A stretch of 64,000 bases of DNA from Macrostomum lignano (Eukaryota), in assembly GCA_002269645.1 (NCBI GenBank), contig NIVC01000768.1, forward strand, positions 141,966 to 205,965, written 5' to 3'. Shown here one piece after another: positions 1 to 13,000 of this stretch. Every line of letters starts with the position of its first letter. Positions within the stretch are counted from its first letter, which is position 1. Position numbers and translations under genes: made by a program. The notes beneath the pieces were generated by a model that saw only the letters and a list, made by a program, of their open reading frames with translations, had not been told where the DNA came from and ran no database searches.

Positions 1-1403
<1,403 letters not shown>

Positions 1404-1742: not shown

Positions 1743-2514
1743 TCAGTCGTCATCCTTTTCTCCACGAGGCTTGCCCTTGCCCTTGCCCTTGCCCTTGCCC
1801 TTGGAGCCGCGCTTTTTGTTGAGCCTGCAATATTTGGGGGCAGCATGGTTCAATATGGTTCAGCATGGTTCAATATGGTTCAGTATGGTTCAATATGGTT
1901 CAATATGGTTCAGCATGGTTCAATATGGTTCAGAATGGTTCAATATGGTTCAATATGGTTCAGCATGGTTCAGTATGATTCAGCATGGTTCAATATGGTT
2001 CAGTATGGTTCAGTATGGTTCAGCATGGTTCAGTATGGTTCAGTATGGTTCAGTATGGTTCAGTATGGTTCAATATGGTTCAGTATGGTTCAGTTTGGTT
2101 CAATATGGTTCAGTATGGTTCAATATGGTTCAATATGGTTCAGTATGGTTCAGTATGATTCAGTATGGTTCAGTATGGTTCAGTATGGTTCAATATGGTT
2201 CAGTATGGTTCAGTATGGTTCAATATGGTTCAGCATGGTTCAGTATGGTTCAGTATGGTTCAGTTGATGGAGATGTAGGGTTTACTCACACAAGGCTGTA
2301 TAGTTGATGGAGATGTAGGGTTTACTCACACAAAATTTGCGGTTTTTTGAATGAATTACATTGCACATTCTACTTGTAATTACTATTTAAACCTATCATT
2401 TTCAGCCGAGAAAATGAACCAGCAAGAAAAACTGAACTTTTTCCTCCACAAATTGAAACTTGGCAACTCAGCCGCTGCTGCAGCGGGGCTTGGGAGGTGC
2501 TGGCGCGGACCCAG
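1743..2514 (-). CDS. putative last two exons of an unidentified small gene (Lys/Gly-rich C-terminus)
   Basis: Exons 2514-2393 and 1824-1743 splice in phase (GAT AG|G CTC) to give ...ENDR|LNKKRGSKGKGKGKGKGKPRGEKDDD*. Other frames also stay open. An upstream exon may lie near 3480-3600. Confidence 0.3.
1843..2263. repeat. 10-nt tandem array (CAGTATGGTT/CAATATGGTT)
   Basis: Direct reading; about 42 units. Confidence 0.97.
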
Positions 2515-2565
2515 CTACAGCCCAAACATTTGATCAGCAAAAAGCTCGCAAACTAAGACGGATTG

Positions 2566-3396
2566 TCTGTTCAATCGGCTCCATTGCATTTCAAACACAT
2601 CATTTTCTGTTCAATCATCTGCATTGCATTTCAAACACATCATTTTCTGTTCAATCATCTGCATTGCATTTCAAACACATCATTTTCTGTTCAATCATCT
2701 GCATTGCATTTCAAACACATCATTTTCTGTTCAATCATCTGCATTGCATTTCAAACACATCGTTTTCTGTTCAATCATCTGCATTGCATTTCAAACACAT
2801 CATTTTCTGTTCAACTGTCTCCATTGCATTTCAAACACATCATTTTCTGTTCAATCGGCTCCATTGCATTTCAAACACATCATTTTCTGTTCAATCGGCT
2901 CCATTGCATTTCAAACACACCATTTTCTGTTCAATCATCTGCATTGCATTTCAAACACATCATTTTCTGTTCAACTGTCTCCATTGCATTTCAAACACAT
3001 CATTTTCTGTTCAACTGTCTCCATTGCATTTCAAACACATCATTTTCTGTTCAATCGGCTCCATTGCATTTCAAACACATCATTTTCTGTTCAATCGGCT
3101 CCATTGCATTTCAAACACACCATTTTCTGTTCAATCATCTGCATTGCATTTCAAACACATCATTTTCTGTTCAACTGTCTCCATTGCATTTCAAACACAT
3201 CATTTTCTGTTCAATTGGCTCCATTGCATTTCAAACACATCATTTTCTGTTCAATCGGCTCCATTGCATTTCAAACACATCATTTTCTGTTCAATCGGCT
3301 CCATTGCATTTCAAACACACCATTTTCTGTTCAATCATCTGCATTGCATTTCAAACACATCATTTTCTGTTCAATCGGCTCCATTGCATTTCAAAC
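2566..3396. repeat. 40-nt minisatellite (CCATTGCATTTCAAACACATCATTTTCTGTTCAATCGGCT)
   Basis: About 21 units. Explains the three overlapping ORFs at 2460-3589. Confidence 0.97.
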
Positions 3397-3642
3397 GCTC
3401 CAGTTGAGACCAGAACTCTATTTGTACAACAAATACACTTGCAAAGTGCACCGGACCGCATCAGCAGCCAATCAAGTCACCCATGCTTCTCGGTATACAT
3501 TCTGCCAGAGGGGGGCGAAGCCAAGTGGACAAGCGCGGCGCTCTGACGTGCCAGCGGCCCAGGCTCGATTCCAAGTGCCGTCACATTAATTTGTGGCTAA
3601 ATTAGAATCTCGGCTTGGCTCTGCTCGTGCAGTTAACGGACT

Positions 3643-4035: not shown

Positions 4036-5816
4036 TCAACGTCCAATTAGCTGACTTGGCGGTCCGGGCAGGGGGGCGCGGCCCCAGGACTGCTGCTGCA
4101 TGGAGACGGGCACTGCAGCATCGGCTGCGGAGGATGGCGCAACAGCTGATCTCATCTGCTGTCTGGAAGAGCCCAGCTGATAGGCGAGCAGCAGGTATTG
4201 CTGCACAGTGACGGGATAGGTGTAGTCAATTGGTCCGGTAGCGGCCTGGGCCTGCAGGTGAGCCTGCAGAGCTTCGTTCGGATGTTCAACAGCAAAGGCG
4301 CGGTCGGGGAAAACTCCGCTGAAAAACTCTTTCAACAATGGCCAGCCGAATTGCAGCCGGTTGCAGGGCCGGTACTCCGCTTCGACAAATACGCCTTTGA
4401 CGCTGTGCGACTGCAGAGGTTGGTGGTTAACAGCATGTTGCCGGTTGTGCAATCATGTTTGATAGCCACTTTGCTGAGGGATCAGAGAGCGATCCCAGAT
4501 TGGGGCACAGGAGGAGACTCTAGATGCAGCTGTTAGATTAGAGGGCGATTCTAGATGCAGCTGTTAGATTAGAGGGCGATTCTAGATGCAGCTGTTGGAT
4601 TAGATGGCAGCTAGATGCAGCTGTTGCTGGATTAGAGGGCGATTCTAGATGCAGCTGTTAGATTAGAGGGCAGCTAGATGCAGCTGTTGCTGGATTAGAG
4701 GGCGATTCTAGATACAGCTGTTGGATTAGAGGGCGATTCTAGATGCAGTTGTTGGATTAGAGGGCGATTCTAGATGCAGCTGTTAGATTAGAGGGCGATT
4801 CTAGATGCAGCTGTTGGATTAGAGGGCGATTCTAGATGCAGCTGTTGGATTAGATGGCAGCTAGATGCAGCTGTTGCTGGATTAGAGGGCGATTCTAGAT
4901 GCAGCTGTTAGATTAGAGGGCAGCTAGATGCAGCTGTTGCTGGATTAGAGGGCGATTCTAGATGCAGCTGTTGGATTAGAGGGCGATTCTAGATGCAGTT
5001 GTTGGATTAGAGGGCGATTCTAGATGCAGCTGTTAGATTAGAGGGCGATTCTAGATGCAGCTGTTAGATTAGAGGGCAGCTAGATGCAGCTGTTGCTGGA
5101 TTAGAGGGCGATTCTAGATGCAGCTGTTGGATTAGAGGGCGATTCTAGATGCAGTTGTTGGATTAGAGGGCGATTCTAGATGCAGCTGTTGGACTAGAGG
5201 GCGATTCTAGATGCAGCTGCTAGACTAAGGGGTGATTCTAGATTAAGGGATGATTCTAAATGGAGAACCAGAGGCTATCCTAGCTGCATGCATCAGAAGA
5301 TCAGGGAGAACACATTATAATTAAACGCAATCTAATAGAGCCACTCGCCTGTTTGAACACGGCCGTGGCCAGCCGGACAGTGAAATCGGCCAGCCGGTAT
5401 TTCGGACCCCGGCAGTGCACAGCCTGGCCGGGCTTGGCCTGGTACAGGGCGCGCAGCTGGCCAAGCAGCAGGCCGAACATGGAGTCGGCGCTGACTAGCG
5501 GGCCGGCCGCGGCTTCAATTGAAGATCCCGACGGCACAATATAGGACGACACCGGCGCCTCCGATGAGGCCACAACGTGAAGAGTGCGCGGCTGCGGCTG
5601 CTGCTGGGAGGCCGGCTGCTGCTGTTGCTGCTGCTGCTGTACAGGCGTGTACACCTCCATGTCCAGACTGAACTGTCCGGACTCGCGCTCAGCGCCTAGG
5701 CGTTCTAGACGGCCAGACAGATCCTCGATTAGTTGCTGTCCGGACAGAGCTGGGCCGCTTGACAACGGCTGCTCACCGGCTGAGCCGGACTCAATGAAAG
5801 CCACAACAGTGACGCC
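4036..5816 (-). CDS. MED20: Mediator subunit 20 (2 exons: 5816-5349, 4410-4036)
   Basis: [M]GVTVVAF...IEDLSGRLERLGAERESGQFSLDMEVY, YRLADFTVRLAT, KGVFVEAEYRPC and YPVTVQQYL align with MED20 (MGVTCV...LTRKLEMLGAEKQGTFCVDCETY; YQYCDFLVKVGT; RGISVEVEYGPC). Phase-0 intron with a GC donor (CAG|gcgagt). No ATG in the first exon. Confidence 0.88.
4517..5260. repeat. ~31-nt minisatellite in the MED20 intron
   Basis: Unit CTAGATGCAGCTGTTAGATTAGAGGGCGATT. Confidence 0.97.
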
Positions 5817-5859
5817 CTGGAGTTTACAAATTTATACGTGAATTTTCTTCTTTTTAGAG

Positions 5860-6074
5860 AATTATTATTATTATTAACTGATTACACCTGGGCCAGGACT
5901 GGAGGGTCGTCACACCCTCAATTACCCCAGCTAATGCTGGCACCCATTTTACAGCTGGGTGAACTGAAGCAATGCAGAGTTAGTGTCTTGCTCAAGGGCA
6001 CAAATTGTTCCAGTAGGATCGGGAATCGAACCCCCGACCTTCATGTCCGACGTCCATTGTCGATTGACCACGCG
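5860..6074 (-). mobile_element. tRNA-derived SINE with CORE-like central domain
   Basis: The minus strand reads a degenerate A box, the B box GGTTCGATTCCC, then TGTGCCCTTGAGCAAGACACTAAC...CAGCTGTAAAATGGGT (resembles the CORE domain TGTGACCTTGGGCAAGTCACTTAAC...CTGTAAAATGGG), then a (TAA)n tail. Confidence 0.75.
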
Positions 6075-6730
6075 TGCAAGATTTCATTCCTGCACACTTA
6101 TGCGTGCAGGATTGTAAGATAAGAACTGAGGACCAATAGATAAAGTAGACAGTATACTATCGTGGAATTTAATGTTCTTCAGGCCGTCTCGCTTACTGTA
6201 CATTTCACAGCCATCAATTATCGATCGTGCCCTAGACCCACCTCCCCCAAGCCCTTCTGCGTCTGCCATAAAATATTTTCTACCCTTAGCCGCGCCTCTC
6301 TGTCTGACACCCCCTTCCGTGCACAGCCAGCCCTAAAAATTAAGTTAATTTGTCTACCTCCTAGACCTTATCCGATCGAGATTCATACCAGAGAGAGAGG
6401 GGCCCTCTGACAGTCAATTATTTTGATAAGCGCAGCATTTTGATAAAAATTCTTAATGTTACTATTTCGCCCCCTTGACCCCTCTCTATGCACTCACTCA
6501 AATTTATGATGCAACTTAATAGTCAATCGACAATGGGATTCCAGACAACGTGCCTGAGTACAGTATTGGCGCCTGTGTGCTCAGGAGTCTGCGGAATGGG
6601 CAGAATTTCCGTCATTGCTAATTAAGGGTCGGTAAACAAGTATCGAGTGCTGCCATGCAAAACAGGTAAAGTAAATAAATTTTTTAAATCGAATAGCTCA
6701 GATAGGGTCATCGGACTGGGCCGCGACATA

Positions 6731-8030
6731 CGAGGGGAAGTCAAAAAGTAATGATAATTTTTCTCTCACGCCTAAAATATCAGAGTTATTGAACTGCAAC
6801 TGGTTTCATTTGAAAAAACATCTTTTGATCTTTATTTGACAGAGTTTTGGTTCTTCTAAAGTGATTGATGCCTGCATGGTGACACTCTAATCACAGTATA
6901 TCCTTTCAGCAATGGAAAATTCAAAAATCGAAGCTCGTACTAACGTGACGTTTATTGTATAGCTTGGTTGGAAGCCAGCCGAAATCATTGACGCTTTGAA
7001 GAAGGTCTATGGGGACACTGCTCCACCAGATCCAACCATTTATTGCTGGATTCAAGCTTTTAAGGAAGGCCGAGAGTCCACGGAAGACGCCCAGCGGTCG
7101 GGAAGGCCCACAACATCGCGCACAGGGGAAAGTGTGGCAGCTGTGCAGCCAGTGATTGAGCTGGATCGGCGCGTGACCATAGACAATATTGCTGACAAAG
7201 TGGGCATTGCTCATGGCAGTGCTCACTCCATTGTGACGGACTGTCTTGGTCTGAGCAAGCTGAGTGCCCGCTGGGTCCCGAGGCTGTTGCGGCCTGAACA
7301 CTGGGTTCAGCACACTGAGTGTGCCATCAACCTGCTGAACCGCTTGGACGCTGGTTCAGAAAACAGTTACCAGCGCTTAGTGACCGAGGATGAAACATGG
7401 ATATTTCAGTACAATCCCGAGTCCAAGTTCCAATCCAAGGAGTGGCTGCCACGAGGTTCAGCAGGCCCCAAGAAGTTCCATGCGGAACAGTCTGCAGCGA
7501 AGGTCTTGGCGACGATTCTCTGGGATGTTGAGGGAGTGGTGATGGTGGACTTCTTGGAAAGCCAGAAGACCATCAATGCCACCTATTATGCGTCGCTTCT
7601 GCGAAAGCTCTGCACCGAACTGGCCAAAAAGCAACCTGGCAAGCTGCACCTTGGGATTCTCTTTCACCACGACAATGCACCAGCCCACACTTCTCGGCTC
7701 TGCCATGAAGCCCTGCAAGATTTCCGCTGGGAAATCCTCCAGCATCCTCCATATAGCCCTGGTTTGGCTCCATAGGACTTTTTTTGCTTCCCAAGCTGAA
7801 GGAAGCAATCAAAAGGAGACCAAAATGAGGACAAAGAGGCTGCCAAAAAGGCTACTGTACAGTGGCTTGTTGCACAGCCTCCTGAGTTCTATGTGAACGG
7901 CCTGGAGAGATGGCGACACCGCATGGAGAAGCGTCTGACCCTGGAGGGGGACTATGTAGAAAATTAGATTTCCATTTGAAGTTTGACACTCGTGACAACA
8001 AAATTATCATTACTTTTTGACTTCCCCTCG
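6731..8030 (+). mobile_element. full-length mariner transposon (irritans/Hsmar2-like), transposase disrupted
   Basis: TIRs CGAGGGGAAGTCAAAAAGTAATGATAATTTT at both ends, flanked by TA duplications (6729-30, 8031-32). Transposase from ATG 6912 (MENSKIEARTNV..LGW) with WVPR, VTEDETW, HHDNAPAH and YSPGLAP. Stops at 6960 and 7773 and a frameshift near 7790. Confidence 0.95.
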
Positions 8031-8306
8031 TAACTGCCATTTTTCTCTTCACGCTTTTTTATTGATTCACTCTGTCACTGATCCTACTTCCACAAGTTCA
8101 ATCAAGACACAACAGTAACAGGATAGAAGAAACCAGTAATATTTATACAGTAGCTTACTAACAAAATTGCCAATAAGATGGAATACGAAGCTTTTTTAGA
8201 CAATTAAAAAATAATAAAGCGGATGCGCGCACTCACTACTGCTATCAGTAGTTGAATCAGATTTTCTAGGTAATGCAGACTAATTATTAATTAAAGAGTT
8301 GAGAAG

Positions 8307-8498
8307 CTACATAGGCGGCGGGGCGGCATCGCTGATGGGGCTGATGATGCTGAGCAGAGTGACTGGCGGATGGCCGGGCTCAGAGCCTTGCATGTAGCCC
8401 AGCACCATGACTAGCGGGATGTAGCCGTAGTAGAAGGCCAGTCGGCACAGGCCAACCAGGTTCATGATGCGCTTAGCGATGGTCTGAGTGACTGACAT
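8307..8498 (-). CDS. TOMM7: mitochondrial import receptor subunit TOM7
   Basis: MSVTQTIAKRIMNLVGLCRLAFYYGYIPLVMVLGYMQGSEPGHPPVTLLSII matches the TOM7 pattern (WGFIPLVIYLGF..GADPGMP..TVLSLL). AG acceptor 16 nt upstream of the ATG. Confidence 0.9.
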   Translation of the reverse strand: MSVTQTIAKRIMNLVGLCRLAFYYGYIPLVMVLGYMQGSEPGHPPVTLLSIISPISDAAPPPM

Positions 8499-8644
8499 GT
8501 CCGGGTTCGAATTTCTGAGCATGAATGTGCGCGCGATTTTTATATTATTAATATACTAATACAAAATATTCATAGCGACATACAATCCCAAACAAAAAAT
8601 CAAATGGGATAAAATCCCTAAAGTTACCCCGGCCAGCAGGACAA

Positions 8645-9075
8645 AATCCCTAATGGGATAAGATCCCTGATGAGATAAGATCCCTAATGGGATGAGATCC
8701 CTAGTGAGATAAAATCCCTAATGGGATAAGATCCCTAATGAGATAAGCCCTAATGAGATAAGCCCTAATGGGATAAGATCCCTAATGAGATTAATGGGAT
8801 AAGATCCCTAATGAGATTAATGGGATAAGATCCCTAATGAGATAAGATCCATAATTGAATAAGATCCCTAATGAGATAGGATCTCTAATGGGATAAGATC
8901 CCTAATGGGATAAGATCCCTAATTGGATAAGATCTCTAATGGGATAAGATCCCTAATGGGATAAGATCCCTAATTGGATAAGATCCCCAATGAGATAAGA
9001 TTCCTAATGGGATAAGATCCCTAATGGGATGAGATCCCTAATGAGGTAAGATCCCCAATGGATAAGATACATAAT
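8645..9075. repeat. ~17-nt tandem array (CCTAATGGGATAAGATC)
   Basis: Direct reading; between NVL and TOM7. Confidence 0.95.
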
Positions 9076-9610
9076 TAGACAAAATCCAAAGCCATCATAT
9101 ATATATCTCTAATAGAATAAAATCTCATCCTAATGCCTAATAGGATAAAATGGAACCAACCAGTGATTACACCCGCAGTGCTATCAGCAGTCGCAATCTC
9201 GCAGTTCGCAATCAGACCAGGTCAAAGGATATATTTATTGTACAATAAAACTGGTTCCAACGAGTACACACTAATAGGATGAAGACGAAAATGCATAATT
9301 ATAAATAAACTATTAGTTTCAACCAGACAATACGGTAGCAGGTTTACATAAGAATACTCTATTATAAAATAATTTAACTAACCAGCCAGCAACTGCAGCG
9401 TACAGCACACTGTTGCATTGCATAAATGCTGGGTTTTTATTAAAGCACACAAAAAGGCATACCACTGTAGCTAAAATGGCTCAGTAGGTTTATTAACAAT
9501 AGCCATTCTACACAAATATTCAATAGTTCCCTAAATTATTTTCAGCATCAAAATACTACACTTCGACAGTTTGAAAACGTACGAGTAGTTAGGCCAAGCT
9601 TGAGGATGGA

Positions 9611-9976
9611 ACTCACTCTGGAACTGATTCCGAACTCACTCGAACTGATTCCGAACTCACTCTGGAACTGATTCCGAACTCACTCGAACTGATTCCAAAA
9701 TCACTCTGGAACTGATTCCGAACTCACTCTGGAACTGATTCCGAACTCACTCTGGAACCAATTCCGAACTCACTCTGGAACCAATTCTAAACGCACTCTG
9801 GAACCAATTCCGAACTCACTCTGGAACCAATTCCGAACCCACTCTGGAACCAATTCTGAACTCACTCTGGAACCAATTCCGAAGTCACTCTGAAACAAAT
9901 TCCGAAATCGGTCTGGAACCAATTCCAAACTCACTCTGGAACCAATTCCGAACTCGGTCTGGAACCAATTCTGAAC
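9611..9976. repeat. 23-nt tandem array (GAACTCACTCTGGAACCAATTCC)
   Basis: Direct reading; starts about 100 nt past the NVL stop. Confidence 0.95.
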
Positions 9977-10077
9977 TGTGAAATCAACTCCCTCAATTTT
10001 TGCACAAAGTTGAATTCGCGCGCAAAAATATCTAGCTATAAGAGCAATCCGTTATCGATCGATAATCGCATCCAATT

Positions 10078-13000
10078 TCAATCCGCATCGGCGCCGCTAT
10101 TTGCCGCATTCCCGTCTTCGCCGTTCAGCTGCAGTCGTCGTCGTCGACTAGCCGTCGCCTGGGCCAATTTTACCGACAGCGCCGCTAGCGCCACATTGAA
10201 GTCCTCGTCAGTCACGTAGCGCCTACCACCGGCCAGCCTGGCGTTGAGCTTGGCCTCCTCAACCAGCTGGCTGAGCTCGGCGCCGCTCAGTCCCCGGCAC
10301 CTGCCATCGTCGGCAATCCTAGCCAGCGTAGACATCCGGTCGACACCGTCGCCGAATGGCGGCTTAGTTCGAGTCAGCGCGGCTAGAACTTCGAGACGTT
10401 CGGCGGAAGACTGCGGCTTTCGCACGACGATAGTCTTACCCAGGCGGCCCGGCCGGCGGATGGCCGCGTCAATCAAGTCCGGCCGGTTGGTGGCCGCCAT
10501 GACGAACACCTGGCCGCGGCACTCCAGCCCGTCTAATAGAGTCAGCAGCTGGTTAACCACCTGAGGTTTGTTTGGTGATAGCTTGAAGCAGGTTTATTGT
10601 ATCAACCCGACGATGAAATTAAATTAGCCTTGTGGCTTTCGGCGTTCCACCAATTAAAGACGACATCCTCTTTTCTTTTGCTCACTGCGCCAGCCAATAG
10701 CAACCCTGGCCCACCCCAATCTTTCCTACCCATCCATTTGCTCACTGCGCCAGCCAATAGCAACCCTGGCCCACCCCCATCTTTCCTACCCATCCATTTG
10801 CTCACTGCGCCAGCCAATAGCAGCCCTGGACCACCCCCATCTTTCCCTACCTTGCTGCTTGCCAGCCAATCATAATTAAGAAAACTCACCGTAGAATGAG
10901 CCCCTGTGTCGCTGCCCCGATGGGCGCAAACCGCGTCGATCTCATCGAAGAACACTAGACAGGGCTGGCAGGCTCTGGCATTCTCGAACAGCACGCGCAG
11001 CGCCCGTTCGCTTTCGCCCAGATATTTATCGAATATCTCCGGCCCTTTCACGCTCATAAAGTTCAATCCGGCTTCGTTGCTCAACGCTTTGGCCAGTAAA
11101 GTTTTGCCACAGCCGGGCTCGCCAACTAGTAGCAGACCGTCGGCTTTTTGGCCAATAGCCTCAGCGCCTTCTGGGTCCAGCACCAGCGACATGAATGTCT
11201 GGCGGATCTCGCGCTTAGCTTCGAAACAGCCGCCAATATCCTCCCAGCTGACGTCCGGGATGCGAACAAAGTGCGGCTTCTGCTTCGCCAACGGCAGCAC
11301 CCGATCGAAGGCAGACTGGAGGCGAGCCGAGTCTAATTCGAGAGCAGCTGGCTCGGTGCCAGGTGAGGCTGCAGCGGCTGGTTGGGGCGAGGGAGGGGTG
11401 GGGGCGGCTCTGTGTGACTGGTTCGGTTTTTAAGGGACTTTTATTTCGATATTCAGCACGCGAATGGAAGAATCGCCCTTTACTCTCAATCTCTCATTGA
11501 ACAATCGCCCTCTACTCTCATTGGAGAATCGCCCTTTACTCTCTTTGAAGAATCACCCTCTACTCTCATTGATGAATCGACCTCTACTCTCTTTGAAGAA
11601 TCGCGCTCTACTCTCTTAGAAGAATCGCCCTCTACTCTCATTGATGAATCGACCTCTACTCTAATTGATCAATCGCGTTCTACTCTTATTGAAGAATCGC
11701 CCTCTTCTCTCCTTGAAGAATCGCCTTCTACTCTCATAGGAGAATCGACCTCTAATTTCATAGGAGAATCGACCTCTAATCTCATTGGAGAATCGCCCTC
11801 TAATCTCATTGGAGAATCGCCCTCTGCTCTCATTGGAGAATCGCCCTCTAATCTCATAGGAGAATCGTCCTCTACTCTCCTATAATCTAGCACAATGGAC
11901 TCACAAAGAGAATCGCCAAAGTCTCGCATCAGCTTGGCGATCCGCTGGTAGCCGCTATCTTCGCCGTCAACGCCGCCGCCCCCGCTGTGAGGCAGTCGCA
12001 GGGAAACGTGCGCATCTTCCACCGCCTCCCGGACCAGCTGCTTCAAATCGCCAACATTGAATCCAACAGTTCTCAGAGAGCAGGATTCCAACAGATCGGA
12101 GCCGCTGCAGTCCAGCAGTCGGACCCCGGCCGAAGCGAACAGCTGACTGAGACAGGCGGCGCGTTGGCGCCGATCCAACAAGCCGAGGCGGACAACTTTG
12201 CGGAAGGCGCACAACAGACCGTCGTCCATGTCGGTCAGGGCGGAGCTGGACTCGCCAATTAACAATACGCGGGTGCCGACGAACTCAGGCAGACAGTTGA
12301 GCAGAGCTCGGCGGCAGGCGGCCAGAGGCTTGTTGGCCTCGGAGACGGTGGACAGTCGGTCGACGCTGTGCAGCAACAGCAGGCAGGGCTGGGCGGCAGT
12401 GGCTTTGGACAGCACAGCTTGCCACATCGCTGCCGCGGCTTCGGCAGTTTTGCCAGCGAACCAGTCTAGGTGCAGCTCGCATAGGGGCATGCCTGAGAGC
12501 TGGTTAAAATTTCAGTGAAGCTGGGGATCAATGGGGAATAGTGCTCAGATAAAGCTGGGGATCAATGGGGAATAGTGCTCAGATAAAGCTGGGGATCAAT
12601 GGGGAATAGTGCTCAGATAAAGCTGGGGATCAATGGGGAATAGTGCTCAGATAAAGCTGGGGATCAATGGGGAATAGTGCTCAGATAAAGCTGGGGATCA
12701 ATGGGGAATAGTGCTCAGATAAAGCTGGGGATCAATGGGGAATAGTGCTCAGATAAAACTGAGGATCAATGGGGAATAGTGCTCAGATAAAGCTGGGGAT
12801 CAATGGGGAATAGTGCTCAGATAAAGCTGGGGATCAATGGAGAATAGTGCTCAGATAAAACTGAGGATCAATGGAGAATAGTGCTCAGATAAAGTTAGCG
12901 ATCGATGGAAGATCCATGCCACAATAGAAAACACAATCATCAGACGATTTTTTGAAAGACTTACAGCGGCCACGGCCCGAACCAGAGTGGTTTTTCCGCT

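What the first reader, a model, noticed from the sequence alone, without database searches (positions are those of the whole stretch)
5790..5860. MED20 has no genomic start codon: exon begins at Gly2, consistent with a spliced-leader AUG
Seen: the minus strand reads tttgtaaactccag|GGC GTC ACT GTT (GVTV), a phase-0 acceptor exactly at residue 2 of the conserved MED20 N-terminus MGVT, with no in-frame ATG before it. Upstream lie a SINE, a mariner and then TOM7. Established: flatworm spliced leaders end in AUG, which can serve as initiator Met. Inference: this essential gene would be translatable only after trans-splicing.
Basis: partly seen in the sequence, partly recalled or inferred. Interest (0 to 1): 0.7.

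Follow-up and report, generated by a model that had tools for sequence, protein, structure and literature searches.

The report
MED20 start codon from spliced leader
In the flatworm Macrostomum lignano the Mediator subunit gene MED20 has no genomic start codon: its first exon begins at codon 2, right after a trans-splice-type acceptor, so the ATG that ends the worm's spliced leader most likely supplies the first methionine. This mechanism has been known in flatworms since 2006, so this is a new example, not a new kind of thing.

Summary
The window is the last 64 kb of Macrostomum lignano contig NIVC01000768.1. On the minus strand, MED20 (Pfam PF08612, E 1e-26) begins at 5816 with GGC GTC ACT GTT (GVTV), directly after aaaCTCCAG. 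An in-frame TAA lies six codons upstream with no ATG between. The first genomic ATG in any frame is codon 53.

In 31 full-length MED20 proteins, M-G-V is at least 90% conserved, and the window's G1/V2 align with residues 2/3. The published M. lignano spliced leader ends in ATG, and CTCCAG fits the published trans-acceptor motif [T/C]TNCAG. Joining leader to exon reads MGVTVVAF.

All three genomic copies keep the junction. Their GenBank proteins are 5'-partial and start at G2 or V3. In the TOM7-MED20 spacer, ATG|GT sites occur only inside a mariner that the two other copies lack.

I found no leader-to-exon read, so trans-splicing at this site is strongly inferred, not shown. Leader-AUG initiation is established in Schistosoma (Cheng et al. 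2006) and Echinococcus, and has been noted for Macrostomum.

The parts
5817..5822 (-). 3' splice acceptor CTCCAG, with AG at 5818-5817. This is the proposed spliced-leader trans-splice site.
   Evidence: Sequence. It fits the published M. lignano trans-acceptor motif [T/C]TNCAG (PMC8629364). It is identical in all three genomic copies. The motif alone is weak: there are 9 matches in the 2,490-nt spacer.
5349..5816 (-). MED20 exon 1: 156 codons, starting in phase 0 at Gly2 (GGC GTC ACT GTT). It has no ATG in any frame before codon 53.
   Evidence: The translation is identical to GenBank PAA77064.1 (P0002). The first 156 nt are identical in the three copies.
5832..5834 (-). In-frame TAA six codons upstream of Gly2. 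It closes the genomic reading frame.
5658..5660 (-). First genomic ATG of the mRNA (codon 53, in frame, context GACATGG). It is a possible start for an N-truncated product if the leader AUG is absent or skipped.
4411..5348 (-). MED20 intron: 938 nt with a GC-AG pair (CAG|gcgagt ... ctctgcag|TCG). It contains a 31-bp tandem-repeat array at 4519-5243.
   Evidence: This splice is needed to reproduce the GenBank protein exactly.
4036..4410 (-). MED20 exon 2, through the TGA stop at 4038-4036.
5830..5836 (-). TATAAAT, 14-20 nt upstream of the acceptor. It is one of only two TATAAA in the spacer. It is the basis of the rival 'transcription start, not trans-splice site' reading.
6729..8032 (+). Degenerate mariner element with 42-bp terminal inverted repeats and flanking TA. 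It is inserted in the TOM7-MED20 spacer of this copy only and lies antisense to MED20.
   Evidence: PF01359 Transposase_1, E 1.5e-18. The frame is interrupted by stops.
8058..8063 (-). AATAAA 243 nt after the TOM7 stop. It is the likely TOM7 poly(A) signal.
   Evidence: It is conserved in all three copies.
8307..8522 (-). TOM7 ORF, the upstream neighbour on the same strand. It is a candidate first gene of a TOM7-MED20 transcription unit.
   Evidence: PF08038. Annotated CDS and TATAAAA context.

Best explanation
MED20 of Macrostomum lignano gets its initiator codon from the spliced leader. The pre-mRNA is either a TOM7-MED20 read-through transcript or a transcript with its own outron. It is trans-spliced at CTCCAG|G (5817/5816) to the 35-nt leader CGGTCTCTTACTGCGAAGACTCAATTTATTGCATG. 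The mature mRNA then has a 32-nt leader-derived 5' UTR, followed by AUG-GGC-GUC-ACU, which translates as MGVTVVAF and restores the conserved MED20 N-terminus.

Shown:
- There is no genomic ATG before Gly2.
- The acceptor sits in phase 0 exactly at codon 2.
- The leader's ATG is in frame.
- The junction is conserved in three copies.

Inferred:
- The site is actually used for trans-splicing.
- Ribosomes start at the leader's AUG.
For: 1; aaaCTCCAG|GGC GTC ACT. An in-frame TAA lies 6 codons upstream, and exon 1 has no ATG in any frame until codon 53.
2. M-G-V is at least 90% conserved at the MED20 N-terminus, and the window's G1/V2 align to positions 2/3. Downstream, the stretch LERLGAERESGQFSLD matches the family consensus LExLGAxKxGxFxVD. 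So the 52 codons before the first genomic ATG are coding.
3. (PMC8629364): the species has one leader ending in ATG. About 30% of its genes are trans-spliced, mostly conserved ones. The acceptor motif is [T/C]TNCAG, which CTCCAG fits.
4; leader plus exon 1 reads MGVTVVAFIESGSAGEQPLS, and the leader contains no other ATG.
5; the three GenBank proteins (PAA77064.1, PAA85846.1, PAA85865.1) are flagged partial and begin at G2, V3 and G2. A 5'-partial ORF call is possible only if the transcript model starts within 0-2 nt upstream of that first codon. Had the model reached the TAA, the ORF would have been called from Met53. (PMC5730564): those models were cut at mapped leader-read peaks.
6; the shared spacer contains no ATG followed by GT. 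The three ATG|GT sites in the window lie inside the copy-specific mariner and have poor donors.
7; among the three copies, exon 1 has 3 substituted columns and no gaps. The 468 nt upstream have 10 substituted and 17 gapped columns.
8; leader-AUG initiation is documented in Schistosoma and Echinococcus, and the terminal ATG of Macrostomum leaders is described as a start codon.
Against: - No leader-to-exon junction read or cDNA was available. A junction-pattern scan of metagenome contigs gave 0. No matching protein with an N-terminal M exists in the protein collection. The gene IDs appear in no searchable paper or held supplement.
- A TATAAAT lies 14-20 nt upstream of the exon start. That spacing is not far from the 22-25 nt seen at the neighbouring TOM7 gene, whose 5'-partial model probably reflects a transcription start. 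So a 5'-partial model ending at this spot is not proof of trans-splicing.
- One of the three models starts 3 nt further in.
- The leader AUG has a weak -3 base (U), whereas Met53 has GACAUGG.
Confidence: 0.85

Rival explanations
1. A gene-specific, cis-spliced upstream exon ends in ATG (or in ATG plus a few codons) and is joined to the 5817/5816 acceptor. The start codon would then be genomic but located elsewhere.
For: The acceptor would serve cis-splicing as well. Flatworm acceptors are reported to be shared between cis- and trans-splicing (PMC12582326). ATG|GT occurs at 7573, 7180 and 7039. ATG|GC occurs at 8040, 7706, 7327, 6656, 6269 and 6214.
Against: All three ATG|GT sites lie inside the mariner, which is absent from the two other copies. 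Those copies have no ATG|GT in the spacer at all. None of the sites has the GT[A/G]AG donor typical of the species, and the ATG|GC sites are far from a GC-donor consensus. Family conservation puts M directly before G, so a longer N-terminal extension is unlikely. The transcriptome-based GenBank models have no such exon.
Confidence: 0.05
2. The annotated 5' end is a transcription start driven by the TATAAAT at 5836-5830, and the mRNA is not trans-spliced. Translation would begin at Met53 (5660), or weakly at an in-frame near-cognate codon such as GUG at codon 5. The result would be an N-truncated MED20.
For: TATAAAT is one of only two TATAAA in 2,490 nt and sits 20 nt before the exon start. TOM7 next door shows a similar TATA-to-model-start spacing. 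Met53 is the first AUG in any frame and has a strong context.
Against: A transcription start would have to coincide exactly with three things: a consensus acceptor, a codon boundary, and residue 2 of a conserved N-terminus. The 52 skipped codons encode conserved MED20 sequence and are identical in all copies. The region around the TATAAAT is locally very AT-rich, so a chance match is plausible.
Confidence: 0.06
3. The locus is a decaying copy that lost its ATG, and the functional MED20 lies elsewhere in this highly duplicated genome.
For: The DV1 genome is heavily duplicated. The copies differ by three amino-acid substitutions and one codon indel.
Against: All three copies found have the same ATG-less junction, intact frames and an intact splice pair. 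Coding sequence is more conserved than intron or upstream sequence, and six of the exon 2 differences are synonymous. No other M. lignano MED20 cluster exists in the protein collection.
Confidence: 0.02

Closest known systems
Spliced-leader 3'-terminal AUG used as initiator methionine in Schistosoma (Cheng, Cohen, Ndegwa & Davis, J Biol Chem 2006; as summarised in PMC9851317, PMC5832876, PMC12582326)
   Same: The leader ends in AUG. The acceptor lies exactly at codon 2. The conserved N-terminus is restored only if the leader's AUG is used. [quoted passage not shown]
   Different: The species is a free-living macrostomorph, not a parasite. The gene is MED20; I could not check whether MED20 is on the published lists, because the paper is not held. 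Here neither trans-splicing nor initiation was shown experimentally.
Echinococcus granulosus leader-bearing cDNAs that need the leader AUG (PMC3510090)
   Same: [quoted passage not shown] That use is reported as conserved within Neodermata.
   Different: Those cases rest on cDNAs that carry the leader. Here only genomic sequence and gene-model boundaries are available.
M. lignano spliced-leader trans-splicing and operons (Wudarski 2017, PMC5730564; Ustyantsev & Berezikov 2021, PMC8629364; Wiberg 2023, PMC10468722)
   Same: Same organism, same leader and same acceptor motif. The gene is conserved, which is the class enriched among trans-spliced genes. Its upstream neighbour on the same strand is probably not trans-spliced, a pattern seen in 18% of the operons they define. 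[quoted passage not shown]
   Different: None of these papers analyses which genes depend on the leader's ATG, and MED20 is not mentioned.
slORFs: ORFs created by start codons in spliced leaders of nematodes, trypanosomes and Oikopleura (slORFfinder, PMC9851317)
   Same: The leader contributes the start codon.
   Different: Those are mostly near-cognate NUG codons that create new or alternative ORFs. Here a canonical AUG restores the ancestral full-length ORF.

Membership tests
Flatworm mRNAs initiated at the spliced-leader AUG (Cheng et al. 2006 class) | The species' spliced leader ends in AUG | tested here: met
   The M. lignano leader is CGGTCTCTTACTGCGAAGACTCAATTTATTGCATG (PMC8629364). The organism was identified.
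Flatworm mRNAs initiated at the spliced-leader AUG (Cheng et al. 2006 class) | The mRNA carries the leader, joined at this acceptor (leader-containing reads or cDNA) | not testable with these tools
   No transcript data could be reached. Indirect support only: the acceptor fits [T/C]TNCAG, and the 5'-partial GenBank models begin within 3 nt of it in all three copies.
Flatworm mRNAs initiated at the spliced-leader AUG (Cheng et al. 2006 class) | The leader AUG is in frame with the main ORF, with no intervening stop | tested here: met
   Leader plus exon 1 translates as MGVTVVAFIESGSAGEQPLS.
Flatworm mRNAs initiated at the spliced-leader AUG (Cheng et al. 2006 class) | No genomic AUG can give the conserved N-terminus | tested here: met
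   TAA lies 6 codons upstream and the first ATG is codon 53. The shared spacer has no ATG|GT donor.
Flatworm mRNAs initiated at the spliced-leader AUG (Cheng et al. 2006 class) | The N-terminus matches orthologues only if the leader's Met is added | tested here: met
   M-G-V is at least 90% conserved, and the window's G1/V2 align to positions 2/3.
Flatworm mRNAs initiated at the spliced-leader AUG (Cheng et al. 2006 class) | Translation actually starts at the leader AUG in vivo | not testable with these tools
   This needs ribosome profiling, N-terminal proteomics or a reporter.
MED20 (Mediator head subunit, Pfam PF08612) | Significant match to the Med20 profile and to solved MED20 chains | tested here: met
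   PF08612 at 93.8 bits against a cutoff of 25. Chains 6w1s_O, 8t1i_O and 7emf_T at E 1e-16.
Spliced-leader-resolved operon as defined by Ustyantsev & Berezikov 2021 | Adjacent genes on the same strand, the downstream one trans-spliced, with a repeat-adjusted intergenic distance under 1 kb | tested here: inconclusive
   TOM7 and MED20 are adjacent on the same strand. From the TOM7 stop to the acceptor is 1,196-1,215 nt in the mariner-free copies and 2,490 nt here. From the AATAAA to the acceptor is 953-971 nt. The TOM7 poly(A) site, the repeat annotation and the trans-splicing of MED20 are not known here.

The most novel reading that the evidence does not exclude
Dependence of MED20 on the leader's AUG could be old and regulatory, not incidental. 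The genomic ATG would have been lost before the Macrostomum duplications, perhaps at the base of flatworms. TOM7 and MED20 would form a two-gene operon whose second cistron can only be translated full-length after trans-splicing. Leaky scanning past the weak-context leader AUG to the strong-context Met53 would produce a second, N-truncated MED20 isoform. Trans-splicing efficiency would then set the ratio of functional to truncated Mediator head subunit, for example in neoblasts.
Probability: 0.12. Interest if true: 0.45.

Novelty: new member of a known kind. Interest (0 to 1): 0.2.

Why it matters
It gives a clean example, supported by genomic sequence, that leader-supplied start codons also operate in an early-branching, free-living flatworm. 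M. lignano is also the flatworm model with stable transgenesis.

Practical consequences:
- The GenBank MED20 proteins flagged 'partial' are probably complete except for the leader-encoded Met.
- Gene finders that require a genomic ATG will mis-call such genes, either from Met53 or as fragments.
- Transgene or knock-in designs for such genes must keep the acceptor or add an ATG.

The finding does not change what is understood about trans-splicing.

Tried and rejected
- Direct transcript evidence:
  - The protein cluster holds only three GenBank entries and no M-initiated version from run assemblies.
  - A scan of metagenome contigs for the leader-exon junction gave 0.
  - The supplements of PMC5816591 and PMC5730564 do not contain the gene IDs, and PMC8629364 has no held supplement.
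  - No paper mentions Mlig005043 or Mlig029932.
  - Cheng et al. 2006 is not held.
- Orthologues in other flatworms:
  - The first profile search returned only 2 hits. I suspect low-complexity words in the query swamped it.
  - A cleaned profile found only 13 proteins, from sponge, rotifers and unnamed sources, and no flatworm.
  - The best non-Macrostomum hit (P0004, a Logan contig) has an ordinary 86-nt 5' UTR with its own ATG and is of unknown, probably nematode-like, origin.
  - So whether other flatworm MED20 genes also lack a genomic ATG remains open.
- A neighbourhood survey of other genes failed, because two long window ORFs are not annotated proteins.
- No spliced-leader RNA gene is in the window, and there are no Rfam hits. 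The 7-mer TTGCATG at 6660-6654 equals the leader's 3' end, but it is followed by GC and has no further similarity, so I rejected it as a leader gene.
- Naming TOM7 through the cluster look-up, to test whether it shares a transcription-unit prefix with MED20, returned no name.
- Rejected: a TOM7-MED20 fusion through the in-phase ATG|GT inside the TOM7 CDS (8408-8406). The donor GTGCTG is poor and no model supports it.

Full report
**What is there.** The minus strand of the window reads ...cacgTATAAATttgtaaaCTCCAG|GGC GTC ACT GTT GTG GCT. The AG is at 5818-5817 and the first exon base is 5816. Translated in frame, this gives H V * I C K L Q | G V T V V A F. A TAA at 5834-5832 closes the frame six codons before Gly, with no ATG between. 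Exon 1 has no ATG in any frame until codon 53, at 5660-5658.

**Identity and gene model.** The two-exon product hits Pfam Med20 (PF08612, 93.8 bits, E 1.3e-26). It also hits human and mouse MED20 chains from Mediator structures (E about 1e-16). The model is as follows:
- Exon 1 is 5816-5349 (156 codons).
- The intron is 5348-4411. It is 938 nt, has a GC-AG pair, and carries a 31-bp tandem array.
- Exon 2 is 4410-4036.

This model reproduces GenBank protein PAA77064.1 exactly ('hypothetical protein BOX15_Mlig005043g2, partial [Macrostomum lignano]'). The window is the last 64 kb of NIVC01000768.1 in assembly GCA_002269645.1.

**Is Gly really residue 2?** A search of 1.84 billion representative proteins returned 90 MED20 relatives. 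Among the proteins held, 29 begin MGV. In an alignment of 31 full-length members, the columns M, G and V are at least 90% conserved, and the window's G1 and V2 occupy the second and third (also the trimmed alignment). Further in, LERLGAERESGQFSLD matches the family consensus LExLGAxKxGxFxVD. So the 52 codons before the first genomic ATG are genuine coding sequence, and a Met is missing exactly one codon before the exon begins.

**Where the Met can come from.** M. lignano has one 35-nt spliced leader, CGGTCTCTTACTGCGAAGACTCAATTTATTGCATG. About 30% of its genes, mostly conserved ones, are trans-spliced, and the top motif at trans-acceptors is [T/C]TNCAG (PMC8629364). The six bases before the MED20 exon, CTCCAG, fit that motif. 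Joining the leader to exon 1 gives AUG GGC GUC ACU = MGVTVVAF. The 5' UTR is then 32 nt, and the leader has no other ATG. No leader RNA gene lies in the window, so the leader is supplied from elsewhere, as expected.

**Indirect transcript evidence.** The three GenBank proteins of this gene family are all flagged partial. They start at G2 (two copies) or V3 (one copy). A 5'-partial ORF call is possible only if the transcript model begins within 0-2 nt upstream of that first codon. Had the model reached the TAA, the ORF would have been called from Met53. The models come from the Mlig_RNA_3_7 assembly, whose TBONE pipeline cuts transcription units at peaks of mapped, leader-trimmed reads (PMC5730564). 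This fits a mapped trans-splice site at 5816. It is not proof, because I could not see the read track.

**The paralogues as a control.** Two further copies on NIVC01000302.1 keep aaactccag|GGCGTC. Their TOM7-MED20 spacer is about 1.2 kb, against 2.49 kb here. The difference is a mariner at about 8032-6729. It has 42-bp terminal inverted repeats and flanking TA, matches PF01359, and its frame is broken by stops.

It finds no support:
- ATG followed by GT occurs only at 7573, 7180 and 7039, all inside that mariner, and none has a GT[A/G]AG donor.
- The mariner-free copies have no ATG|GT in the spacer at all.
- The ATG|GC sites have poor donor context.

Among the three copies, exon 1 has 3 substituted columns and no indels. 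Its first 156 nt are identical. The 468 nt upstream have 10 substituted and 17 gapped columns, and the intron has 26 substitutions plus large repeat-length differences. Six of the exon 2 differences are synonymous. The copies therefore look like constrained, working genes, not decaying ones.

**Rivals.**
- A hidden cis exon (about 0.05) is disfavoured for the reasons above.
- A transcription start (about 0.06) deserves mention. A TATAAAT lies 14-20 nt upstream of the exon, and it is one of only two TATAAA in the spacer. The neighbouring TOM7 model is also 5'-partial. It starts right after a genomic ATG that follows no AG, with TATAAAA 22-25 nt upstream, which looks like a true transcription start. 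So a 5'-partial model is not in itself a trans-splice mark. But a start site would have to coincide exactly with a consensus acceptor, a codon boundary and residue 2 of a conserved N-terminus, and it would leave 52 conserved codons untranslatable. Trans-splicing explains all three coincidences at once.
- A pseudogene reading (about 0.02) is contradicted by the conservation pattern.

An N-truncated product from Met53 (context GACAUGG) could coexist with the full-length protein, because the leader AUG has U at -3. This is speculation.

**Context.** An AAA ATPase gene, TOM7 and MED20 lie on the same strand in all copies. TOM7 probably has its own TATA promoter and an AATAAA 243 nt after its stop. 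MED20's acceptor is 953-971 nt beyond that signal in the mariner-free copies. By the published criterion, this pair is borderline for an operon that starts with a non-trans-spliced gene: the downstream gene must be trans-spliced and the repeat-adjusted distance must be under 1 kb. I rate an operon at about even odds. It does not affect the main conclusion.

**Comparison with what is known.** Flatworm leaders end in AUG, and that AUG can serve as initiator. This was shown by Cheng et al. 2006. [quoted passage not shown] The Echinococcus EST study used the same N-terminus argument and found the usage conserved within Neodermata (PMC3510090). For Macrostomum, Wiberg et al. [quoted passage not shown] The M. 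lignano trans-splicing paper does not discuss leader-AUG usage, and no paper names this gene. The finding is thus a new, well-supported member of a known class, in a lineage where the class has been assumed but not catalogued.

**What failed.** I could not obtain leader-junction reads or flatworm orthologues for comparison (44-46). I also could not survey other genes in the window. Whether the ATG loss is ancient remains open.

**Verdict.** Novelty is 'new member of a known kind' and interest is about 0.2. A search for the junction in existing RNA-seq would settle it.

Noticed in passing
window 8307-8522 (-); L002 7273-7300: The GenBank TOM7 CDS is also 5'-partial. It starts at CTC, immediately after a genomic ATG (8522-8520) that is not preceded by AG. 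A TATAAAA lies 22-25 nt upstream. This looks like a transcription start inside the apparent ORF. The real start is then probably the next Met (MSVTQTIAK..., ATG about 8498-8496), which gives a 63-aa TOM7.
   Followed up: partly
window 6729-8032 (+): A mariner copy with 42-bp terminal inverted repeats, flanking TA and a stop-interrupted transposase. It is present only in this copy of the locus and is inserted about 25 nt downstream of TOM7's AATAAA. If TOM7-MED20 is one transcription unit, the pre-mRNA of this copy must read through 1.3 kb of antisense mariner.
   Followed up: partly
window 4411-5348 (-): The single MED20 intron uses a GC donor (CAG|GCGAGT) and is filled by a 31-bp tandem array (4519-5243). 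The length of the array differs between the three copies (201 gapped alignment columns).
   Followed up: partly
L001 1-8782: In one paralogous copy the annotated gene fuses the upstream AAA ATPase with TOM7: a 701-aa product with both PF00004 and PF08038. This suggests either read-through transcription across AAA-TOM7 or an annotation artefact. In the other two copies the genes are separate.
   Followed up: no
window 5830-5836 (-): A TATAAAT lies 14-20 nt upstream of the MED20 acceptor and is conserved in all copies. It could be chance in an AT-rich stretch, part of the 3' splice-site region, or a promoter element.
   Followed up: partly
window 8406-8408 (-): An ATG|GTGCTG inside the TOM7 CDS is in phase with the MED20 acceptor. 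A cis splice there would give an in-frame TOM7(N-terminal)-MED20 fusion. The donor is weak and no model supports it.
   Followed up: no
window 6654-6660 (-): TTGCATG, identical to the last 7 nt of the spliced leader, lies in the spacer and is conserved in all copies. It is followed by GC and has no further similarity to the leader, so it is probably chance.
   Followed up: yes
It is shared by all three copies. ARAGORN finds no tRNA and the window has no second copy, so the SINE identity is unverified.
   Followed up: partly
window 285-742, 1841-2264, 2562-3396, 8646-9068, 9609-9977, 11491-11879: Dense satellite-like tandem arrays with periods of 3, 10, 40, 17, 23 and 24 bp flank the genes. The long 'ORFs' at 2460-3589 are artefacts of the 40-bp array.
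   Followed up: no
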